From assembly GCA_000388065.2 (NCBI GenBank), contig KB932219.1: DNA of 10,415 nucleotides; one strand, 5' to 3'. Position numbers and translations under genes: made by a program. Below are positions 3 through 9,351 of the stretch, piece by piece. Position 1 is the first letter of the stretch; each line of letters starts with the position of its first letter. Under the pieces are notes generated by a model. The model was not told the origin of the DNA and did not search any database. It saw nothing but the letters and a program-made list of their open reading frames with translations. Source of the DNA: Fonticula alba ATCC 38817 (lineage: Eukaryota; Protista; Nucleariida).

Positions 3-2692
3 GCGCTGGCCTTCGAGTCGCAGGGCGCCCGGTGGACGGGCAGCGTACAAACGCTGGCCTGGGCCGCGGCCGGCGAGGGCACGGCCGGGTTCGGCATGCT
101 GGCCGAGGGGACGCTGCTGCATGTGGCCGGTACGGGCTGCGAGGGCGGCCGCCCGGTCGAGGACGAGGGCCGAAGGTGGCTGGGGGTCGAGCTGCCGGCC
201 GAGACCGAGACCGATACCGAGACCGGGACCGAGATTGTGATCGAAGCCAAGACCAAGACTGAGATCGAGCCCCCCCTGTGCCTGGAGGTGGTGACCAGTC
301 CGCTGGAGGGCTTCCCCGAGGGCCGGGCCGCCGTGAGCCAGGCCCTGTACCAGACGCTGCGCGCCCGCCTCCCCGACAGCATGGACCTCTTTTTGCAATC
401 TCACGACCAGCCGCTGGTGCTATTGTGCGTGCCTTTTTTCCCTCTCACCAGGCAAGTGCCCAGCGCTGACGCCCCCCCCCCCCCAGCCCCGACCCGAACC
501 CGCGGTCCAGCCTGTCGGATGGGCAGCTGATCGTCGGCCGGGGGGACGTCGGCCGGATCTTCGGCCACCGGCGGGTCCTCTGGGCCGGGGCCCGGGCCTC
601 GCCCACGCATGTGTTCCAGGTGGACCTGCACCTGGCCCTCGCCGGGGGGCCGCCGGTGAGCTGCGTCGTGCAGTCGCTGGCCCTCGGGGCGTTCCTCCAG
701 CTGCTGGATCAGTCGGTGATCTTCCTGGGCCAGGTGCGCGGGGTCCTCCTCCTGGGGGGGGGGGTTCATGGCGGCAGGGCCCGGACTGACTTGCCTGCCG
801 GTGGCGGTGTCCGGCTGCAGGTGTGCCACTTCCCGGCCGGGGGCACGATCCTGCGCGGTCGAGTGGCGCGGCTGCTGGACACGGGCCTGCGCCCGGTGCG
901 CGCCGGGTACCTGGACAATGGGCATGCCCCGGTGTTTGTGCACATGAGTGTCCCGGGCCGGGGGTTCCGCGTGGTGGGCCAGCCGGAGTCGGTGCTGCTG
1001 CCGGTGCCGCGGCTGGCGGAGCCCATCCGCCTGCCGGTGACCACCCGCCAGTTCGCGGTGTACATCGAGGCGGAGTCGGCCCAGGTGCCGGAGGCCACCT
1101 TCCTGGCGCTGCAGCGGCACTTCCTGGTGGCCGGGCCGGCGATCTTCATCAACCAGGACTACCGACTGGTGTGCGTTCTGCCTCGCGGGGCCGGGCCGAC
1201 TCGCGCGCGCGCGCGCGCGCACAGAGCACTGACCCTGCGTGTGGCTGGGCCGGCCGCGTGGCCGGCCGCCAGGCCGAAGCTCAAGTATGGCCTGGACCTG
1301 GAGCCGCATCATGTCCTGGTGGGCGTGGGGTTGCGGCGGGACAAGCGCCGGCCGCTGGTCCTGCGGTACTGCCAGCCGCCGGACCTGCTGCTTGCCAAGT
1401 GCTGCGCCGTGCCGAAGGAGCAGCAGCAGCAGCCCCCGGCGGCGGTCGACCCGGGGGTGCTGACGCGCCTCCTGCACCGGTCCCTCCCCGAGGACCGGGC
1501 CATCATCAAGGGCCGGGTACGTCGGCCGGTGTGCCTGGCGCATGCGGGCCTTTTAGCAGCGCGTGTGCACAGCATGTGTTTTTTTTCCGCTTGCCGGACA
1601 TGTGTCCATGGGCGCATTTGCGTGTGCACGGCTGCCTGCACGGCTGCCTACGCACGTGTCTGCACGGTCGCCTGCACGGCTGCCTGCACGGTCGCCTGCA
1701 CGGTCGCCTGCACGGCTGCCTGCACGGTCGCCTGCACGGTCGCCTGCACGGCTGCCTGCACGGCTGCCTGCACGGCTGCCTGCACGGCTGCCTGCACATG
1801 CACACGCACACGCACACGCACACGCACACGCACACGCACACGCACGCTCGCCCCTCCCCCCACCCCCCCCACACACACATACATACATCGATACATCCAT
1901 TCGCCACACCAAGCACTGTGCTAATGCCCACCGGCCGCCCAGCTGTATGACACGGAGCCGGGATCGCCGGACTTCTTCCTCCTGCCCAACTGGCTGGGAG
2001 CCGAAGGCCACGCGTCGGTGGCGATTGGCACCCTGGTGCCGGGGCTGACGCGGCTCTTTTTCGAAACGACCAACACGCGGCTGGCCCCGAAGCCGCCGCC
2101 GGCCCTGGCCGTGCACTGCGGCCAGCGCCTGCTGCTGCTGGACCTGGCCCTCGTCCGGACCGGGTCTCCCCTGTACCCGGGGCTGATGCTGCCGCGGGAG
2201 GTGTTCCAGTCGGCGGCCGAGTCGCTGGGGGGCGCGGCGCCGCCGGCGTGTCTCTTCTTCGTGTGCCACGGGCGGGCCTTCGTGGCGCGGCTGGCCGAAG
2301 TGCACGATGTGCCCGGGGTGGCGCGGGTGTGCGAGGACCTGCACGAGCACCTCCGGCCCGGGGGGGCCCTGCTGGCGCATGTGTCCCGGCTGCCGGAGCC
2401 CATTGGCCTGGGCACGGTGTACCTGCGCGTGTCGCCGGCGGTCGGCCAGCAGGGGGCCGGCTCGCTGGCGGAGCCGCGCCCAATGCAGGAGGCCCTCCTG
2501 GAGGAGGCCCTAGCCATGGCCTTCCCCGACCGGAGCATGGCCCTGCTGGAGCGACGGCCCTTCGGCCGGTGCATCCTCATGCCGGAGCTGCTGCTGGACA
2601 CCGACGGCCAGGAGGTCGCCTGCGGGCTCTTCCGGCCGGGCGAGACGCGCGTGCACTTCCACTTCGCGGGGGCCGCCCGGGGGGGGCCATGA
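3..2692 (+). CDS. Gene A (5'-partial, spliced): tandem NSF/Cdc48 N-domain-like protein, paralog of gene B; window holds the end of module 3 and modules 4-6
   Basis: Exons 3-424, 487-733, 821-1170, 1273-1516, 1943-2692 (TGA). Introns 425-486 (phase 2), 734-820 (phase 0), 1171-1272 (phase 2), 1517-1942 (phase 0), each GT..AG with a CTRAY branch motif (GCTGAC 465, ACTGAC 785, ACTGAC 1228, GCTAAT 1920). The spliced frame is open and aligns exon-for-exon with gene B exons 7-11; exons of 350 and 750 nt have identical lengths in both genes. Bases 1-2 (AG) correspond to the acceptor of B intron 6. Confidence 0.85.
201..233 (+). repeat. GA(G/T)ACC hexamer repeat encoding the acidic T-E/T-D linker (gene A)
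   Basis: gagacc gagacc gatacc gagacc gggacc gag; counterpart in gene B at 6762-6785. Confidence 0.8.
1202..1220. repeat. (CG)9C alternating dinucleotide tract inside gene A intron 1171-1272
   Basis: cgcgcgcgcgcgcgcgcgc read directly from the sequence. Confidence 0.95.
1625..1792. repeat. 12-bp minisatellite TGCACGG(CT/TC)GCC, 14 units (one degenerate), intronic
   Basis: Unit order CT,CT,degenerate,TC,CT,TC,TC,CT,TC,TC,CT,CT,CT,CT. Confidence 0.95.
1800..1845. repeat. (GCACAC)7+ microsatellite, intronic
   Basis: Seven perfect GCACAC units plus a partial unit directly after the 12-bp array. Confidence 0.95.
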
Positions 2693-2968: not shown

Positions 2969-3913
2969 NNNNNNNNNNNNNNNNNNNNNNNNNNNNNNNN
3001 NNNNNNNNNNNNNNNNNNNNNNNNNNNNNNNNNNNNNNNNNNNNNNNNNNNNNNNNNNNNNNNNNNNNNNNNNNNNNNNNNNNNNNNNNNNNNNNNNNNN
3101 NNNNNNNNNNNNNNNNNNNNNNNNNNNNNNNNNNNNNNNNNNNNNNNNNNNNNNNNNNNNNNNNNNNNNNNNNNNNNNNNNNNNNNNNNNNNNNNNNNNN
3201 NNNNNNNNNNNNNNNNNNNNNNNNNNNNNNNNNNNNNNNNNNNNNNNNNNNNNNNNNNNNNNNNNNNNNNNNNNNNNNNNNNNNNNNNNNNNNNNNNNNN
3301 NNNNNNNNNNNNNNNNNNNNNNNNNNNNNNNNNNNNNNNNNNNNNNNNNNNNNNNNNNNNNNNNNNNNNNNNNNNNNNNNNNNNNNNNNNNNNNNNNNNN
3401 NNNNNNNNNNNNNNNNNNNNNNNNNNNNNNNNNNNNNNNNNNNNNNNNNNNNNNNNNNNNNNNNNNNNNNNNNNNNNNNNNNNNNNNNNNNNNNNNNNNN
3501 NNNNNNNNNNNNNNNNNNNNNNNNNNNNNNNNNNNNNNNNNNNNNNNNNNNNNNNNNNNNNNNNNNNNNNNNNNNNNNNNNNNNNNNNNNNNNNNNNNNN
3601 NNNNNNNNNNNNNNNNNNNNNNNNNNNNNNNNNNNNNNNNNNNNNNNNNNNNNNNNNNNNNNNNNNNNNNNNNNNNNNNNNNNNNNNNNNNNNNNNNNNN
3701 NNNNNNNNNNNNNNNNNNNNNNNNNNNNNNNNNNNNNNNNNNNNNNNNNNNNNNNNNNNNNNNNNNNNNNNNNNNNNNNNNNNNNNNNNNNNNNNNNNNN
3801 NNNNNNNNNNNNNNNNNNNNNNNNNNNNNNNNNNNNNNNNNNNNNNNNNNNNNNNNNNNNNNNNNNNNNNNNNNNNNNNNNNNNNNNNNNNNNNNNNNNN
3901 NNNNNNNNNNNNN
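2969..3913. other. Assembly gap (945 N) between gene A and gene B
   Basis: Run of N flanked by a G homopolymer on the left and a C homopolymer on the right. Confidence 0.99.
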
Positions 3914-4254
3914 CCCCCCCCCGCCCTCCGCCGAGGGCATGGCCGGGCACGGCTGCCGCCAGCACCACGGCCGGGGTCCGGTGCACGGCGCCCGGACCAA
4001 ACAGCGGGCCCCGCGCATCGAGCCCCCGCGCCAGGCGGCGGGGCTCCCGGCCTCGGCGGCTCCGTTGGCACATCGGCCCGGCCCAGGGGTCTCGATCATC
4101 CCCCCCCCCAGGGCGGGCGCAGACGCGCGGGGGCGGTTTTTCGGCCGGGGCCGCCGCAGGATCCCCGCCGGAGGAACAACACTCAAGCCCCTTACCCCCC
4201 CCTTCCGCGCACTTCTCGCCCTTTTTCGCCCTTTTTCACCCACGCGCTCCCGAC

Positions 4255-7200
4255 ATGGCCGGCATCCACCGGGCGTCGCCGGCGGCGGCGGCGGCCGCCG
4301 CCGCCGCCGCGGCCACCCCTCCCATCCCCTGCCGCATGTTCAGCTTCAATGGCACCCAGGTGCGGGTGGTGGCGGGCACACGGCCGGGCCTGCAGCCCGA
4401 CGCCCCGGGCGACGGGGCCTGGCCGTGGCAGCTGCTCATGGCGCCGGGGCTCTTCGCCAGGCTGGCGGCCGGGGCGCCGGGCCCGCTTTTCCTGGCCGTC
4501 GGCGGGTTGGTTCTCTGGGCACGGTGCGTCCTTTGCTTTGCTTTGGTGGCCTGCCGCGGCGGTGCCTTTGCCGGTGGCCTGCGCGAAGCGCGTCCCTCAC
4601 CCTTTGCAACCTGCTGCGGGCAGGCCCGACCCGCGGACCACGGGCGGCTCGGTCCTGCTGGGCCACGATGTGGCTGCCCTCGGCCCCGGCGAGGGGCCCG
4701 TGCTGGAGGCGCGGCGCTTCGAGCCGGTCGAGCTGCTGGCCGCCTGTCTGACGGTGTCCATGCCGCGGGGCGCGGAGCCGCGGCGGATCCCCCTGGCGGC
4801 GCTGGATGCCCAGCGGCTCCTGGTTGGGCGCACGCAGGGGCTGGCCATTTCCGAGGTGCGCACCCCGGCCAGCGGGCTCTTTGCCGCCGGCGCACCCCCC
4901 CCCCCCCCCCCTCCTCTAACGGTCCACATGCAGATCCTCCGGCTGGCCATCGAGGGGCGCAGCGCGGTGGAGCTGGCCGCGGTCGAACTCCGGGCGGCCG
5001 ATGGCCGCGCCGTGCCCACCGGCATGGTGACCCCGGCCACGACGGTGACGCTGGTTGCCGGCCCGGGCGTCCAGCTGCCGGGCGCGCCGGTGACCGTGGC
5101 CCTCTCGGTCGGGCGCCCCCGGCCGGGCGACGCCGACTCGGCCCCATACCCGCGGCATGTGACCCTCACGAGCATGTACCAGGCCCCTCACGACCTAGAT
5201 GTGCTGCTGGCGCCGGCCGGCGAGGCGGTGGCCCGGGCGCTGGCCCGGTCGGCCCCGGCCGGGGGCCCCTTTTACGTTCGGCACCAGGACCGGGTGCTGG
5301 AAGTCCGGTACGCGGGGGATGTGTCTTTGTGCCAGGGGGGGGGGGTATTCGCGCGCACTCGCTGACCGGCCGCCATGCAGGATCTGCCCCCGGCCGACCG
5401 TGCCGGGGATCGCGCTCCGGGCGAGCGTCCGCGTTGCGGCGTCGCTGGGGTCGGGGTCGGATGGGCGGCCGGTGGCGCTGGACGTGTGCGAGGCGCCGCC
5501 GGCGGTGGCGGTTGCCTGGCTCGAAACCGACGTGGCCCTCTGCCCGGCGCGCCGGGCGCACATGGTGGCCGAGCTGATTGGCGCCCCGCTGACGGCGGGC
5601 CAGGTGCGTTGTGAAGCGCCTGCTCAATGCCCGCCCGGGCCTGGGTCCCTGACACCCGCGCGCCGTGGTAGATCTTCCGCTGGGCCCCGTCGGACGCCCT
5701 GGTGCGGGTGGTCCGGCTGATGGACCGGGACTTCCGGGGCATCGGCGCCGGCCAGGCGGGGGCCTTCGCCGCGGAGACCGTGCTCTTCATGCAGACGGCC
5801 TCCGGGCCCGGCGAGCAGCCGCACCACTTGGTGGTGGTGCCGGAGGCCCCGGCCGGGGAGCGGGCCCTCCTGCTGGCCTCGGTGCCCATGGACCGTGCGC
5901 CCGGCACGCTGCTCGTGTCGGAGGCGGCCTTTTCACGGCTGGCCGGGCCGGGCCGGGCGCACCATCGCGCCATCCCCTTCATCTGTCAGGGAGGGCTCCT
6001 GAATGTGCGGTGCGTGTGAATGTCACCTCCTCCGGGCAGGGGGGGCGTGGGCGTGGTTTTCCACTCCGGGCCCCGTGCTCCCGCATGCTGGCGTGCTGAC
6101 GCGACGCCCGAAACAGGCCGAGTGACCAAGTCGGCCGCTTCGACGTCGGCATCCACCCGCAGGACGCCGAGCAGCTGGGCCTGCCGNNNNNNNNNNNNNN
6201 NNNNNNNNNNNNNNNNNNNNNNNNNNNNNNNNNNNNNNNNNNNNNNNNNNNNNNNNNNNNNNNNNNNNNNNNNNNNNNNNNNNNNNNNNNNNNNNNNNNN
6301 NNNNNNNNNNNGCGCCGCGCCGCTGGTGCTGGAGCGGGCGCCGCGCATCCCGCCGGCGAGCAGCGCCACGGTGGCCTTCTGGCCGGCGGAGGGGTGCTCC
6401 CCGGCCGGCGAGGCCGACCAGCTCAAGGCGGACTTCCTGCGCGCGCACCAGGGGGCCCTCGTGCACGTGGACCAGGTATGCCCGCCGTGTGTGTGTGTGG
6501 GGGGGGGGGGGGTGGATTGTCGACCGTGCTCGTGCCCCTGACCGTGTCTTCCTTGGTGAGAAGGCGCTGGCCTTCGAGTCGCAGGGCGCCCGGTGGACGG
6601 GCAGCGTACAAACGCTGGCCTGGGCCGCGGCCGGCGAGGGCACGGCCGGGTTCGGCGTGCTGGCCGAGGGGACGCTGCTGCATGTGGCCGGTACGGGCTG
6701 CGAGGGCGGCCGTCCGGGCGAAGACGAGGGCCGAAGGTGGCTGGGGGTCGAGCTGCCGGCCGATACCGAGACCGATACCGAGACCGATGCTGAGCTCGAT
6801 ACCAGGACCGAGGCTGAGGCGCCCCTGTGCCTGGAGGTGGTGGTCAGTCCGCTGGAGGGCTTCCCGGCGGGGAAGGCCGCCGTCAGCCCGCGGGTGTACA
6901 TGCTGCTGCGCAGCCATTTGCCCGACAGCATGGACATCTTCCTCCGGTGGCACGACCACATCCTGACGCTGTTGTACGAGCCCCCTGGGCACTTGCCCTG
7001 GCGATGATCTTCCTTCTTGCATGCCCGCCCTGGCGGACGGCCGCGCATGTGCTAACGCGCGGAGCCCAGCCCGGATGCCAACCCGCGGAGGCCGCTGCCA
7101 GACGGGCAGGTGCTCGTCGGCCGGCCGGATGCCGAGCGCGCCTTCGCCCGGAGCCGGGTCCTCTGGGCCGAGGCCACGGTGGCCCTGCCGCACGTGTGGC

Positions 7201-9351
7201 AGGTGGAGGTGCACCTGCTGCGTGGGGACACGTCCATCAAGCAGATCCCCCACTCGGATGCCGTGAGCAAGCTGCTCGAGGGGCTGGATGGCTCGGTGCT
7301 GTGGGTGGGACAGGTGCGCCGGCGGCGCCAGGCCATTGATCTGCGTGGGGTTCCCTGTCTGGCGTCCGACTGACGAGCGTGGCTCCCGGCGGCCGGGCGC
7401 AGGAGGTGGGGTTGCGCCTGGCGGGGAGGGCCCTGCGAGCGCGCGTGACCCGGCTGCTGGATGTCAAGCTGGCGCCCCGGCGCTCGGGGCTCCTCTTGAT
7501 GGACCACACGCGGGCCCTTGTGCATGTCAGCTCCCCGGATTTGGCGTATCGGGTGGTGGATCCGCCGCTGACGGTGTCGCTGCAGGTGCCGCGGCTGGCC
7601 GAGCCCATCCGCCTGCCGGCGGTCAACAAGCCCGGCTCGCTGGCGATGGCCAACCGGCAGGTGCTGCTTTCGGAGCGGACCATGAACGGGCTTCGGCCGT
7701 ACTTCCTGCAGGACGAGATGGATGTGCTGTTCAACGGCAAGTTCCAGATGACGTGCGCCCCCTGCGGCCCTCGGCCGGCATGCCTGCACGCGCATTGGCG
7801 GGCTTGGACTGACACGTGGTGACGGGCGGGCCGGCGCGCCCAGCGGGCGCGGCAAGTCCGGGATCCGGCGCAACCAGGCGGTCCTCGGGGAGAGCCTGCG
7901 CTGGCCGGTCATGGACACGATTTTCCTGACGCCCGACCGGACGCCGGACGTGTGGTCGGCCTTCTGCCAGGTCACCTGGGCCGGGGACGGCAAGCCGCCA
8001 GCGCTGGACGTCCAGCAGCTGGAGGACCTCCTCTTCCGGACCCTTCCCCGGTCCCCGTGCTCGGACCAGGTGCGCGAGCGAGGCTGAGGGGCCGGCCACA
8101 GGGGGAGAGGGGGGCGTTGTCTCCTGATTTGCATCTGCGCGCGACCGCATGCTGGCGTGCAGCTGCATGCTGGTGCACGATCGCATGCTGGTGCATGATC
8201 GCATGCTGGTGCATGATCGCATGCTGCTGCACGATCGCATGCTATTGCACGATCGTATGCTGTTGCACGATCGTATGCTGGTGCACGATCGTATGCTGGT
8301 GCACGATCGTATGCTGGCGTACAATCGCATGCTGGCGTACAATCGCATCCAGTTACACAGCCGCATGCTGGCGTACAATCGCATCCAGTTGCACAACCGC
8401 ACCCAGTTGCACAGCCGCATGCTAGTGTACATCCGCACCCAGTTGCACAGCCGCATCCAGCTGCACAGCCGCATCCAGCTGCACAGCCGCACCCGGTTGC
8501 ACAATCCCCCCTACAGCCGCATTCCCACACGCGCACACACACGCATGTGGACCAGCAGGAAGAGCAAGGCCAGACACTAACCACCACTCCGCCCGGGACA
8601 GACGTACCGCGGGGTGCCGGGCTACCCGGAGATGGGCTTCACCCTGACCAACATGCTGACGGCGGATAATGTGAGCATTATGATCGGGACCGTGGCCGCG
8701 GGGCTGACGCGCGTGTCCTTCGACACCTCGGGCAGCGGGATAGCGGTGGCCCTGCCGCCGGCGGCCATGCTGCTTGCCGGCCGGCGGACACTGCTGCTGG
8801 AGCTGGCCTTCGTGCGGTCCAAGTCGCCGCTGTACTCGGGGCTGATGCTGCCGCGGGAGGTTTTCCAGCTGCTGTTCGAGACGCTTGGCGAGGCGGCCCT
8901 GCCGGAGTGCCTGTTCTTCCAGCTCCATGGGCGGACCTTTTTCGCGAGGCCGGCCGACGCGCACGACGCCCCGCGAGCCATACGCCTGTGCGAGGATTTC
9001 CGGCACTTCGTCACGGATGTCTCGGGGCCGGCGCTGCCCTGGGTGCGCCTGCGCACCCCGGTCCGCCTGGGCATGGTGCACTTGCGCGTGGCCCCGGCCG
9101 GCGGCATGGCGCGGCCGGCGACCACCAGCCTCACCGAGGGGGACCTGCATGCGGCCCTGGGCCGGGTGTTCCCGGACTCGGTTGTGGTGCTGCTCGAGGC
9201 CCGGGCCCTGGTGGTCGAGGGGCTGGTCCTCACGCCGGAGCTGCTGCTGGACACCAATGAGCAGGAAATCCCCTGTGGTCTTCTCTGCCCGGAGGCGACG
9301 CGGGTGGTCTTCCACTTGAAGGCCGTGACGCTGGGCCGGGCCGCCGACTGA
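4255..9351 (+). CDS. Gene B (spliced, about 1220 aa plus gap): six tandem NSF/Sec18/Cdc48 N-domain-like modules, no ATPase domain
   Basis: ATG 4255 (alternative in-frame ATG 4336). Exons 4255-4523, 4624-4855, 4934-5307, 5381-5603, 5672-6009, 6117-6475 (spans N-gap), 6564-6973 (or 6561), 7070-7313, 7403-7752, 7844-8069, 8602-9351 (TGA). All ten introns are GT..AG with CTRAC-like branch motifs, and phases alternate 2,0,2,0,2,0,2,0,2,0. Module 3 'EADQLKADFLRAHQGALVHVDQALAFESQG' resembles human NSF '[29 protein letters not shown]' (recalled from memory, compared by eye). Gene structure is better supported than the domain call. Confidence 0.82.
4280..4309. repeat. Perfect 30-bp palindrome (GGC/GCC triplets) in the poly-Ala coding stretch of gene B
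   Basis: C-GGCGGCGGCGGCGG-CCGCCGCCGCCGCC-G, self-complementary. Confidence 0.95.
6187..6311. other. Assembly gap (125 N) inside gene B exon 6
   Basis: Run of N between the codons for ...LGLP and AAPLVLER... Confidence 0.99.
8070..8601 (+). other. Expanded last intron of gene B (532 nt, phase 0)
   Basis: Donor CAG|GTGCGC, branch ACTAAC 8576-8581, acceptor GACAG|ACG. Same position as gene A intron 1517-1942. Confidence 0.85.
8149..8508. repeat. 18-bp minisatellite, about 20 units, grading from ATGCTGGTGCACGATCGC to ATCCAGTTGCACAGCCGC, intronic
   Basis: 18-nt periodicity is readable unit by unit from 8149; ORF 8149..8580 shows the matching hexapeptide periodicity. Confidence 0.95.

What the first reader, a model, noticed from the sequence alone, without database searches (positions are those of the whole stretch)
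4255..9351. Single polypeptide of six tandem NSF/Sec18/Cdc48 N-domain-like modules with no AAA ATPase: possible hexamer-ring mimic
Seen: after splicing, the protein divides into six modules of roughly 190-200 aa (approx. nt 4336-5060, 5080-5795, 5820-6690, 6820-7540, 7600-8725, 8790-9320). Each has (i) a strand-helix motif such as 'PAVNKPGSLAMANRQVLLS' or 'LEVVVSPLEGFPAGKAAVS', (ii) a psi-loop motif such as 'LWARPDPRTTGGSVLL', 'PTVPGIALRASVRVAASLG' or 'VGIHPQDAEQLGL', (iii) a helix ending in 'LTAGQ/HVDQ/WVGQ', and (iv) a terminal 'G-x-hydrophobic...T-x-hydrophobic' strand such as 'GMVTPATTVTL' or 'GLLCPEATRVVF'. No Walker A, Walker B or second region of homology is present. Established: NSF/Sec18 and p97/Cdc48 have one N-domain per subunit and work as hexamers, so six N-domains per ring; PEX1/PEX6 have two per chain; UFD1 has one with no ATPase. 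N-domains bind SNAP-SNARE complexes or UBX/ubiquitin adaptors. Inference: six N-domains in one ATPase-less chain, split 3+3 by a central acidic linker, could act as a decoy, scaffold or regulator presenting a ring-like SNAP/adaptor-binding surface. I know of no described protein with this architecture.
Basis: partly seen in the sequence, partly recalled or inferred. Interest (0 to 1): 0.85.

Follow-up and report, generated by a model that had tools for sequence, protein, structure and literature searches.

The report
Six NSF-type N-domains, no motor
The slime mould Fonticula alba transcribes one 1216-residue protein made of six very diverged tandem copies of the two-lobed "N-domain" that normally sits in front of NSF/Cdc48-type ATPase motors, with no motor attached; I found no description of this layout, and its job is unknown.

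Summary
The ring-mimic or decoy idea could not be tested.

- **Gene:** 4255-9351 (+) is one 11-exon gene of Fonticula alba. GenBank splits it into H696_06123 and H696_06124.
- **Gap:** RNA and DNA contigs cross 6187-6311 with exactly one letter between. The frame is kept and the protein has 1216 residues.
- **Modules:** there are six modules of 188-198 aa. Both introns of modules 1-5 fall in the same alignment column with the same phase. Profile comparisons link all six modules in register.
- **Fold:** AlphaFold2 models of module 6 (pLDDT 88.6) and modules 1-2 (75.4) match NSF, Sec18, p97 and PEX1 N-domains across both lobes (Z 10-12).
- **What is missing:** no Pfam model is reached. There is no Walker A motif and no AAA domain, and RNA contigs run through the stop codon.
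- **Spread:** relatives were found only as at least seven further F. alba genes. Modules group by position, so the six-domain plan predates the gene expansion.
- **Function (inferred):** an ATP-independent multivalent binding scaffold.
- **Earlier notes:** this scan already found the same architecture in paralogues on other DNA of this genome (s1-065350, -065346, -065347, -065332 and others).

The parts
4255..9351 (+). Whole coding gene, 11 exons, 1216 codons plus stop. Exons: 4255-4523, 4624-4855, 4934-5307, 5381-5603, 5672-6009, 6117-6475 (holds the assembly gap), 6564-6973, 7070-7313, 7403-7752, 7844-8069, 8602-9351.
   Evidence: All introns are GT..AG. RNA-contig joints are listed for introns 1, 2, 4, 5, 7, 8, 9 and 10; intron 6 is bridged by contig pieces ending at 6473 and resuming at 6562. 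Introns 1-4 also match annotated protein P0010, and introns 9-10 match P0008. One 2660-nt RNA contig spans exons 5-11.
6187..6311 (.). Assembly gap written as 125 N. The real content is one nucleotide: C in the RNA runs of the source organism (codon CGC, Arg), A in an independent DNA run (AGC, Ser).
   Evidence: tables 5 and 5c. The paralogue alignment shows one residue at the gap.
4330..5071 (+). Module 1 (residues 26-213), N-domain-like. Introns a (4524-4623, phase 2) and b (4856-4933, phase 0).
   Evidence: In the AF2 model of modules 1-2 it shows the same order of strands and helices as module 6. hhalign to M3 and M4 gives E about 1e-4 in register. Intron columns are shared. No separate structure match for this module appeared in the list.
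5072..5803 (+). Module 2 (residues 214-410), N-domain fold. Introns a 5308-5380 and b 5604-5671.
   Evidence: Against model residues about 200-385, VIA-align gives Z 12.4 for p97-N, 12.0 for PEX1-N and 11.9 for NSF-N.
5804..6716 (+). Module 3 (residues 411-608), which holds the one-letter gap. Introns a 6010-6116 and b 6476-6563.
   Evidence: hhalign to M6 gives 89% probability and to M4 87%, in register. Intron columns are shared.
6717..6785 (+). Acidic Thr/Glu/Asp linker between modules 3 and 4 (residues 609-631, net charge -6). It is encoded partly by a 12-nt tandem repeat.
   Evidence: One DNA run shows a 6-nt length difference at 6760.
6786..7552 (+). Module 4 (residues 632-825). Introns a 6974-7069 and b 7314-7402.
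   Evidence: hhalign to M5 gives 92%, to M3 87% and to M2 88%.
7553..8754 (+). Module 5 (residues 826-1018). Introns a 7753-7843 and b 8070-8601.
   Evidence: hhalign to M4 gives 92% and to M6 88%.
8755..9348 (+). Module 6 (residues 1019-1216), intronless, N-domain fold.
   Evidence: AF2 pLDDT 88.6 and pTM 0.81. Foldseek against PDB is led by NSF/Sec18 N-domains, E 6e-7. VIA-align gives Z 10-11 over 161-169 residues.
8165..8504 (+). 18-nt tandem repeat array inside the long intron 10.
   Evidence: RNA depth is zero there and the RNA joint skips it.
45..2692 (+). 3' part of the neighbouring paralogue H696_06122 (P0002 residues 335-990), head to tail with the gene studied.
   Evidence: tblastn at 81-99.6% identity. 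Gene table of the contig.

Best explanation
Shown: this is one transcribed 1216-residue protein of Fonticula alba. It consists of six tandem, very diverged copies of the two-lobed N-domain (double-psi beta-barrel followed by an alpha/beta lobe) known from NSF/Sec18, p97/Cdc48 and PEX1/PEX6. An acidic linker lies after the third copy, and there is no AAA ATPase. It arose by tandem duplication of a two-intron unit. The six-module plan is older than the expansion into at least eight F. alba genes (this one plus seven relatives), and each position has since evolved as its own lineage.

Inferred: the protein works without ATP as a multivalent binding scaffold. In every characterised N-domain the inter-lobe region binds an adaptor, a substrate or ubiquitin. 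On that basis, each of the six position-specialised modules would bind its own partner or part of a partner, so the chain would bring several ligands, or one large repeated ligand, together.
For: - Gene model and continuity.
- Fold of module 6: AF2 pLDDT 88.6; Foldseek E 6e-7 against PDB and 1.8e-8 against Swiss-Prot models, led by NSF/Sec18, then VAT, PEX1/6, DEPDC5/Iml1 and Cdc48; Z 10-11 over both lobes.
- Fold of module 2: Z 11.9-12.4. Module 1 has the same order of secondary-structure elements.
- Homology of all six modules.
- Identical intron columns and phases.
- No Walker A motif.
- The transcript runs through the stop codon.
- Modules group by position, with support 0.67-0.999. Identity is 27-47% within a position and 16% between positions. 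This points to selection on each position.
- Binding role of N-domains: established knowledge for NSF-SNAP, p97-UBX/VIM/SHP, Pex6-Pex15 and Ufd1-ubiquitin (titles and abstracts listed; tandem N-domains in peroxins in PMC5070193).
Against: - There are no binding data of any kind.
- No known ligand-contact residue could be compared, because no residue-level structural alignment or coordinates were available.
- Sequence profiles (Pfam, PDB) do not recognise the modules.
- Modules 3-5 were not modelled directly, and no separate structure match for module 1 appeared in the list.
- The AF2 alignments consist only of paralogous modules from one species.
- The family was found in a single species, so function cannot be read from conservation across taxa.
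Confidence: 0.55

Rival explanations
1. Decoy or regulator of the canonical machines. The six N-domains would compete with NSF or p97/Cdc48 for their cofactors (alpha-SNAP/Sec17, UBX, SHP or VIM proteins, Ufd1-Npl4) and so tune SNARE recycling or segregase activity.
For: The fold matches NSF-N best for module 6 and p97-N best for module 2. Six copies equal the number of N-domains in one hexamer.
Against: Identity to real N-domains is only 9-17%, and no Pfam CDC48_N or CDC48_2 match exists, so conservation of cofactor contact sites is doubtful. The six positions have diverged from each other to 16% identity. That divergence is not expected if all bind the same cofactor. At least eight genes would be an odd number for a simple decoy. 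Whether F. alba has a canonical NSF was not checked here.
Confidence: 0.12
2. Single-chain pseudo-hexamer. The six modules would pack into a closed ring (3+3 around the acidic linker) that imitates the N-tier of an AAA hexamer as a structural platform.
For: Six modules in a fixed order are kept in the paralogues. pTM 0.66 for the two-module model suggests some defined contact between modules 1 and 2.
Against: In the known hexamers the ATPase ring holds the N-domains in place; they do not form a ring by themselves (established knowledge). No coordinates or error maps were available, so no ring packing was seen. Some annotated paralogues have five or fewer modules, though those gene models may be truncated.
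Confidence: 0.08
3. A fast-evolving lineage-specific family whose job is not cleft-mediated adaptor binding. Examples would be chaperone-like holding of unfolded proteins, as reported for the isolated archaeal VAT N-domain, or a role in recognition or development peculiar to this slime mould.
For: The family was found only in F. alba among 1.84 billion representative proteins. There are many paralogues, two of them adjacent. Paralogues differ strongly.
Against: Nothing positive supports it. Position-specific conservation fits specific partners at least as well.
Confidence: 0.2
4. Annotation or assembly artefact, or a decaying pseudogene. On this view the long reading frame is an accident of about 74% G+C and of joining two genes across a gap.
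For: GenBank annotates two separate genes. The written gap breaks the frame. High G+C gives long open frames on all strands.
Against: Spliced RNA contigs from three runs cross the gap with one letter and cover exons 5-11 in one piece. All eleven exons stay open. The adjacent paralogue is collinear across the gap. The modules fold confidently.
Confidence: 0.03

Closest known systems
N-terminal domain of NSF/Sec18 (PDB 1qcs, 1qdn, 1cr5; 20S complexes)
   Same: Same two-lobed fold in the same order and of the same size (about 190 residues). It is the best structural match of module 6 (Foldseek E 6e-7, Z 10-11, 161-169 aligned residues) and a strong match of module 2 (Z 11.9, rmsd 3.1).
   Different: Identity is only 9-13%. 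One copy per chain is followed by D1 and D2 ATPase domains in NSF, against six copies and no ATPase here. SNAP-binding residues were not compared.
N-domain of p97/VCP/Cdc48 and archaeal VAT
   Same: Same fold. It is the top match of module 2 (Z 12.4, rmsd 3.4) and matches module 6 at Z about 8.
   Different: No Pfam CDC48_N or CDC48_2 membership; one module of 28 reaches E 0.18. There is no ATPase. Adaptor cleft residues were not compared.
PEX1/PEX6 (two consecutive N-domains per chain)
   Same: The only well-known case of N-domains repeated in tandem in one chain (PMC5070193). PEX1-N matches module 2 at Z 12.0 and Pex6 N1 matches module 6 at Z 8.0.
   Different: Two copies followed by two AAA domains, against six copies and none here.
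UFD1 (UT3 domain) and DEPDC5/Iml1 N-terminal domain
   Same: N-domain folds in proteins that have no ATPase of their own. DEPDC5 matches at Z 9.0 and 11.9, and Ufd1-type entries appear among the AlphaFold DB matches.
   Different: A single copy joined to other domains, and both are widespread in eukaryotes. Here the whole protein is a six-fold array found in one species.

Membership tests
Cdc48/NSF-type N-domain fold (double-psi barrel plus alpha/beta lobe) | Two-lobed fold, both lobes present in the canonical order, about 170-200 residues | tested here: met
   Module 6: Foldseek E 6e-7, TM 0.51/0.53 with 1qdn_A, Z 10-11 covering model residues 8-196 against chain residues 1-198. Module 2: Z 11.9-12.4. 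Module 1: same element order. Modules 3-5: by profile homology only.
Pfam CDC48_N (PF02359) / CDC48_2 (PF02933) | Sequence score above the curated threshold | tested here: not met
   No hit for exon pieces, for six full-length paralogues or for 28 separate modules. The best is one module at E 0.18 to CDC48_2. A profile of the modules finds nothing in PDB sequences.
Cdc48-family type II AAA ATPases (NSF, p97, PEX1/6, AFG2/SPATA5) | N-domain followed by D1 and D2 AAA domains with Walker A and B motifs | tested here: not met
   No [AG]xxxxGK[ST] motif in the 1216 residues. No AAA family in Pfam scans. RNA contigs run through the stop codon at 9349-9351.
NSF/Sec18 N-domain specifically | Basic groove residues that bind alpha-SNAP/Sec17 (for example R67 and K68 of mammalian NSF, from my own knowledge) | not testable with these tools
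   No residue-level structural alignment or model coordinates are returned. Net charge of the modules runs from -5 to +2, which shows no strongly basic module.
PEX1/PEX6-like tandem N-domains | Two consecutive N-domains in front of AAA domains | tested here: not met
   Six N-domains and no AAA domain.
UFD1 / DEPDC5-type ATPase-less N-domain proteins | A single N-domain joined to the family's other parts (Ufd1 C-terminal Npl4/p97-binding region; DEPDC5 SABA, DEP and GAP parts) | tested here: not met
   No UFD1, IML1 or DEP family in Pfam scans. The whole chain is accounted for by six modules plus a linker.

The most novel reading that the evidence does not exclude
The protein is a one-chain, position-specialised imitation of the six-fold N-domain tier of an NSF/p97-type hexamer. 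It would dock the same cofactors (Sec17/alpha-SNAP-SNARE bundles or UBX/SHP adaptors) without unfolding them. That would make it an ATP-free holder or inhibitor of SNARE or segregase substrates, diversified into a gene family in Fonticula.
Probability: 0.08. Interest if true: 0.85.

Novelty: new variant of a known kind. Interest (0 to 1): 0.6.

Why it matters
N-domains are known as the substrate- and adaptor-selecting front ends of essential AAA unfoldases, one or two per chain, or as single copies in Ufd1 and DEPDC5. A protein that is nothing but six of them, kept in fixed order through a gene-family expansion, shows that the domain can work as a free-standing repeat module. It gives a natural system for asking what N-domains do without a motor.

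It also corrects the public annotation. Two hypothetical genes, H696_06123 and H696_06124, are one gene, and the 125-N gap is a single base.

The limits are that only one little-studied species has the family and that no function is known.

Tried and rejected
- **Pfam:** nothing on exon pieces, on paralogues or on separate modules.
- **PDB sequence searches:** nothing with one piece or with a module profile.
- **ESM Atlas features for exon 11:** only high-GC actinobacterial look-alikes below the useful score.
- **Plain BLAST and Smith-Waterman with shuffles between modules:** not significant. Profiles were needed.
- **Word-index homologue searches:** they returned only family members, because the candidate list filled with low-complexity matches. 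They did give P0009 and P0010.
- **Alignment A2 of overlapping two-module pieces:** MAFFT laid them out end to end instead of in register, so it was discarded. A3 replaced it, using non-overlapping pairs M1M2, M3M4 and M5M6.
- **Strain differences of run X2:** I classed them as synonymous or not. The cluster at 6639-6722 has partial depth and probably comes from the near-identical paralogue, so no selection estimate is given.
- **UniRef name of P0002** ([quoted passage not shown]): a beta-propeller reading is rejected. No Pfam support exists at E <= 1, and the models have the N-domain fold.
- **Upstream exon hidden before 4255:** the frame is open back to the 945-N gap, but RNA depth is zero at 3914-4225 and the sequence there looks non-coding.
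- **Literature:** no paper in the searched library describes this architecture, and none holds Fonticula alba together with NSF and 'N-terminal domain'.


Full report
**1. Source and gene model**

The window is about 74% G+C. It comes from Fonticula alba, assembly GCA_000388065.2, contig KB932219.1.

Reading GT..AG introns by eye and checking them by script gives 11 exons between 4255 and 9351 on the + strand. The public annotation splits this gene in two:
- H696_06123 (P0010, 481 aa) equals my exons 1-5 for 479 residues and then reads into intron 5.
- H696_06124 (P0008, 409 aa) starts at an internal Met in exon 9 and equals my exons 9-11.

Contigs from three RNA runs of the organism list the joints of introns 1, 2, 4, 5, 7, 8, 9 and 10. 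Intron 6 is bridged by contig pieces that end at 6473 and resume at 6562. Intron 3 rests on P0010 and on zero RNA depth inside it. One 2660-nt RNA contig runs from exon 5 through the stop codon into the 3' untranslated region. RNA depth is zero at 3914-4225, so nothing points to an upstream exon.

**2. The assembly gap**

With 125 N the frame breaks. All three RNA runs and an independent DNA run join 6186 directly to 6312 with one letter between. The letter is C in the RNA runs (codon CGC, Arg) and A in the other DNA run (AGC, Ser). The neighbouring paralogue P0002 reads DAEQLGLP-S-AAPLVLERAPRI across the site, identical on both sides with one residue in between. The gap is therefore a single base, the two sides are one exon, and the protein has 1216 residues.

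**3. Are there six repeats?**

Direct sequence comparison of the modules is not significant. Three other lines of evidence are decisive.
- In an alignment of all modules made without intron information, the phase-2 intron of modules 1-5 falls in one column (108) and the phase-0 intron in one column (210). Module 6 has no introns.
- Profiles built from the orthologous modules of the paralogues match each other. Eight of the 15 pairs have E <= 3e-4, and seven of these are in register along most of the module. All 15 pairs score above the best reversed-profile control (16.2-48.4 against at most 15.8), the weakest only just. The significant pairs connect all six modules.
- The AlphaFold2 models of modules 1, 2 and 6 show the same order of strands and helices.

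The linker after module 3 (residues 609-631) is acidic, with net charge -6. It is partly encoded by a 12-nt repeat.

**4. The fold**

Module 6 was modelled with an alignment of 28 modules. It gave pLDDT 88.6 and pTM 0.81.
- Foldseek against the PDB returns N-domains of NSF and Sec18 in almost all of the first 50 places (best E 6e-7; TM 0.51/0.53 with 1qdn_A).
- Against Swiss-Prot models the order is NSF/Sec18, VAT, DEPDC5/Iml1, PEX6/PEX1, AFG2 and Cdc48.
- VIA-align gives Z 10-11 over 161-169 residues, covering model residues 8-196 and NSF residues 1-198. DEPDC5 scores 9.0, PEX1 8.2 and p97 8.1.

Modules 1 and 2 were modelled together (pLDDT 75.4, pTM 0.66). Module 2 matches p97-N (Z 12.4), PEX1-N (12.0) and NSF-N (11.9, rmsd 3.1). 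The ESM Atlas search by shape again returns only N-domain-bearing ATPases and Iml1.

So the fold is the Cdc48/NSF-type N-domain. A special kinship to NSF is not established.

No Pfam model is reached, and identity to real N-domains is 9-17%.

**5. No motor**

The protein has no Walker A motif and no AAA family in any scan. The transcript ends shortly after the stop codon.

**6. Family and history**

A search of 1.84 billion representative proteins with exon 11 found seven hits: one is the window's own product and six are F. alba paralogues.

The paralogue H696_06122 lies directly upstream, head to tail, and its 3' part occupies window 45-2692. H696_06118 lies about 38 kb upstream.

In a tree of all modules, each position M2-M6 forms its own clade (support 0.67-0.999). 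Identity is 27-47% within a position and 16% between positions. The six-fold duplication is therefore older than the gene expansion, and each position has been kept as a distinct entity.

This scan noted the same architecture several times on other DNA of this genome. Four of those notes were followed up with the same conclusion.

**7. Mechanism**

Shown: the architecture, expression, fold, absence of an ATPase and position-specific conservation.

Inferred: in all characterised cases the N-domain is a binding module, so the most economical reading is an ATP-independent scaffold with up to six different binding sites. The decoy and ring readings remain possible but have no direct support. The strong divergence between positions argues against six equivalent sites for one cofactor.

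**8. Limits**
- Modules 3-5 were not modelled.
- No separate structure match for module 1 was obtained.
- No coordinates were available to judge inter-module packing or ligand sites.
- The presence of a canonical NSF in this genome was not checked.
- The taxonomic restriction rests on single-sequence sensitivity.

Noticed in passing
window 45-2692 (+): The 3' two thirds of the paralogue H696_06122 (P0002 residues 335-990) lie directly upstream, head to tail, so the window holds a tandem pair of six-N-domain genes.
   Followed up: partly
window 1625-1845 and 8165-8504: Both adjacent paralogues carry tandem-repeat arrays (12/6-nt and 18-nt units) inside the intron at the same position, the phase-0 intron of module 5. 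That intron is 532 nt here, against 68-107 nt for the others.
   Followed up: no
window 2969-3913: A second assembly gap of 945 N lies between the two paralogues. Given that the 125-N gap is really one base, its true length is doubtful too.
   Followed up: no
window 6186/6312: The single missing base differs between data sets: C (Arg) in the RNA runs of the source organism and A (Ser) in DNA run X2, which is filed under another organism label. The paralogue P0002 also has Ser there.
   Followed up: partly
window 4270-4315 and 6760-6811: The GCC (poly-Ala) run near the start and the Thr/Glu/Asp linker repeat each show a 6-nt length difference in run X2. The GCC run attracts massive cross-mapping from other transcripts.
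   Followed up: no
window 4255-6019 and 7499-9351: The public annotation splits one gene into H696_06123 (which reads into intron 5) and H696_06124 (internal Met start). About 225 residues in between are in no annotated protein.
   Followed up: yes
P0002 (H696_06122): UniRef names it 'Cleavage/polyadenylation specificity factor A subunit C-terminal domain-containing'. No Pfam family supports this at E <= 1.
   Followed up: yes
runs X4, X13, X14: A soil metagenome run holds 80% of the sampled words of this gene, and sediment and gut metagenome runs hold 20%. Near-identical Fonticula DNA seems to occur in environmental samples.
   Followed up: no
AlphaFold DB and ESM Atlas matches: Proteins annotated as cytochrome b5 domain proteins (one labyrinthulid-like entry, one chlorophyte cluster) match the N-domain models over about 225 residues. 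This hints at other ATPase-less N-domain fusions.
   Followed up: no
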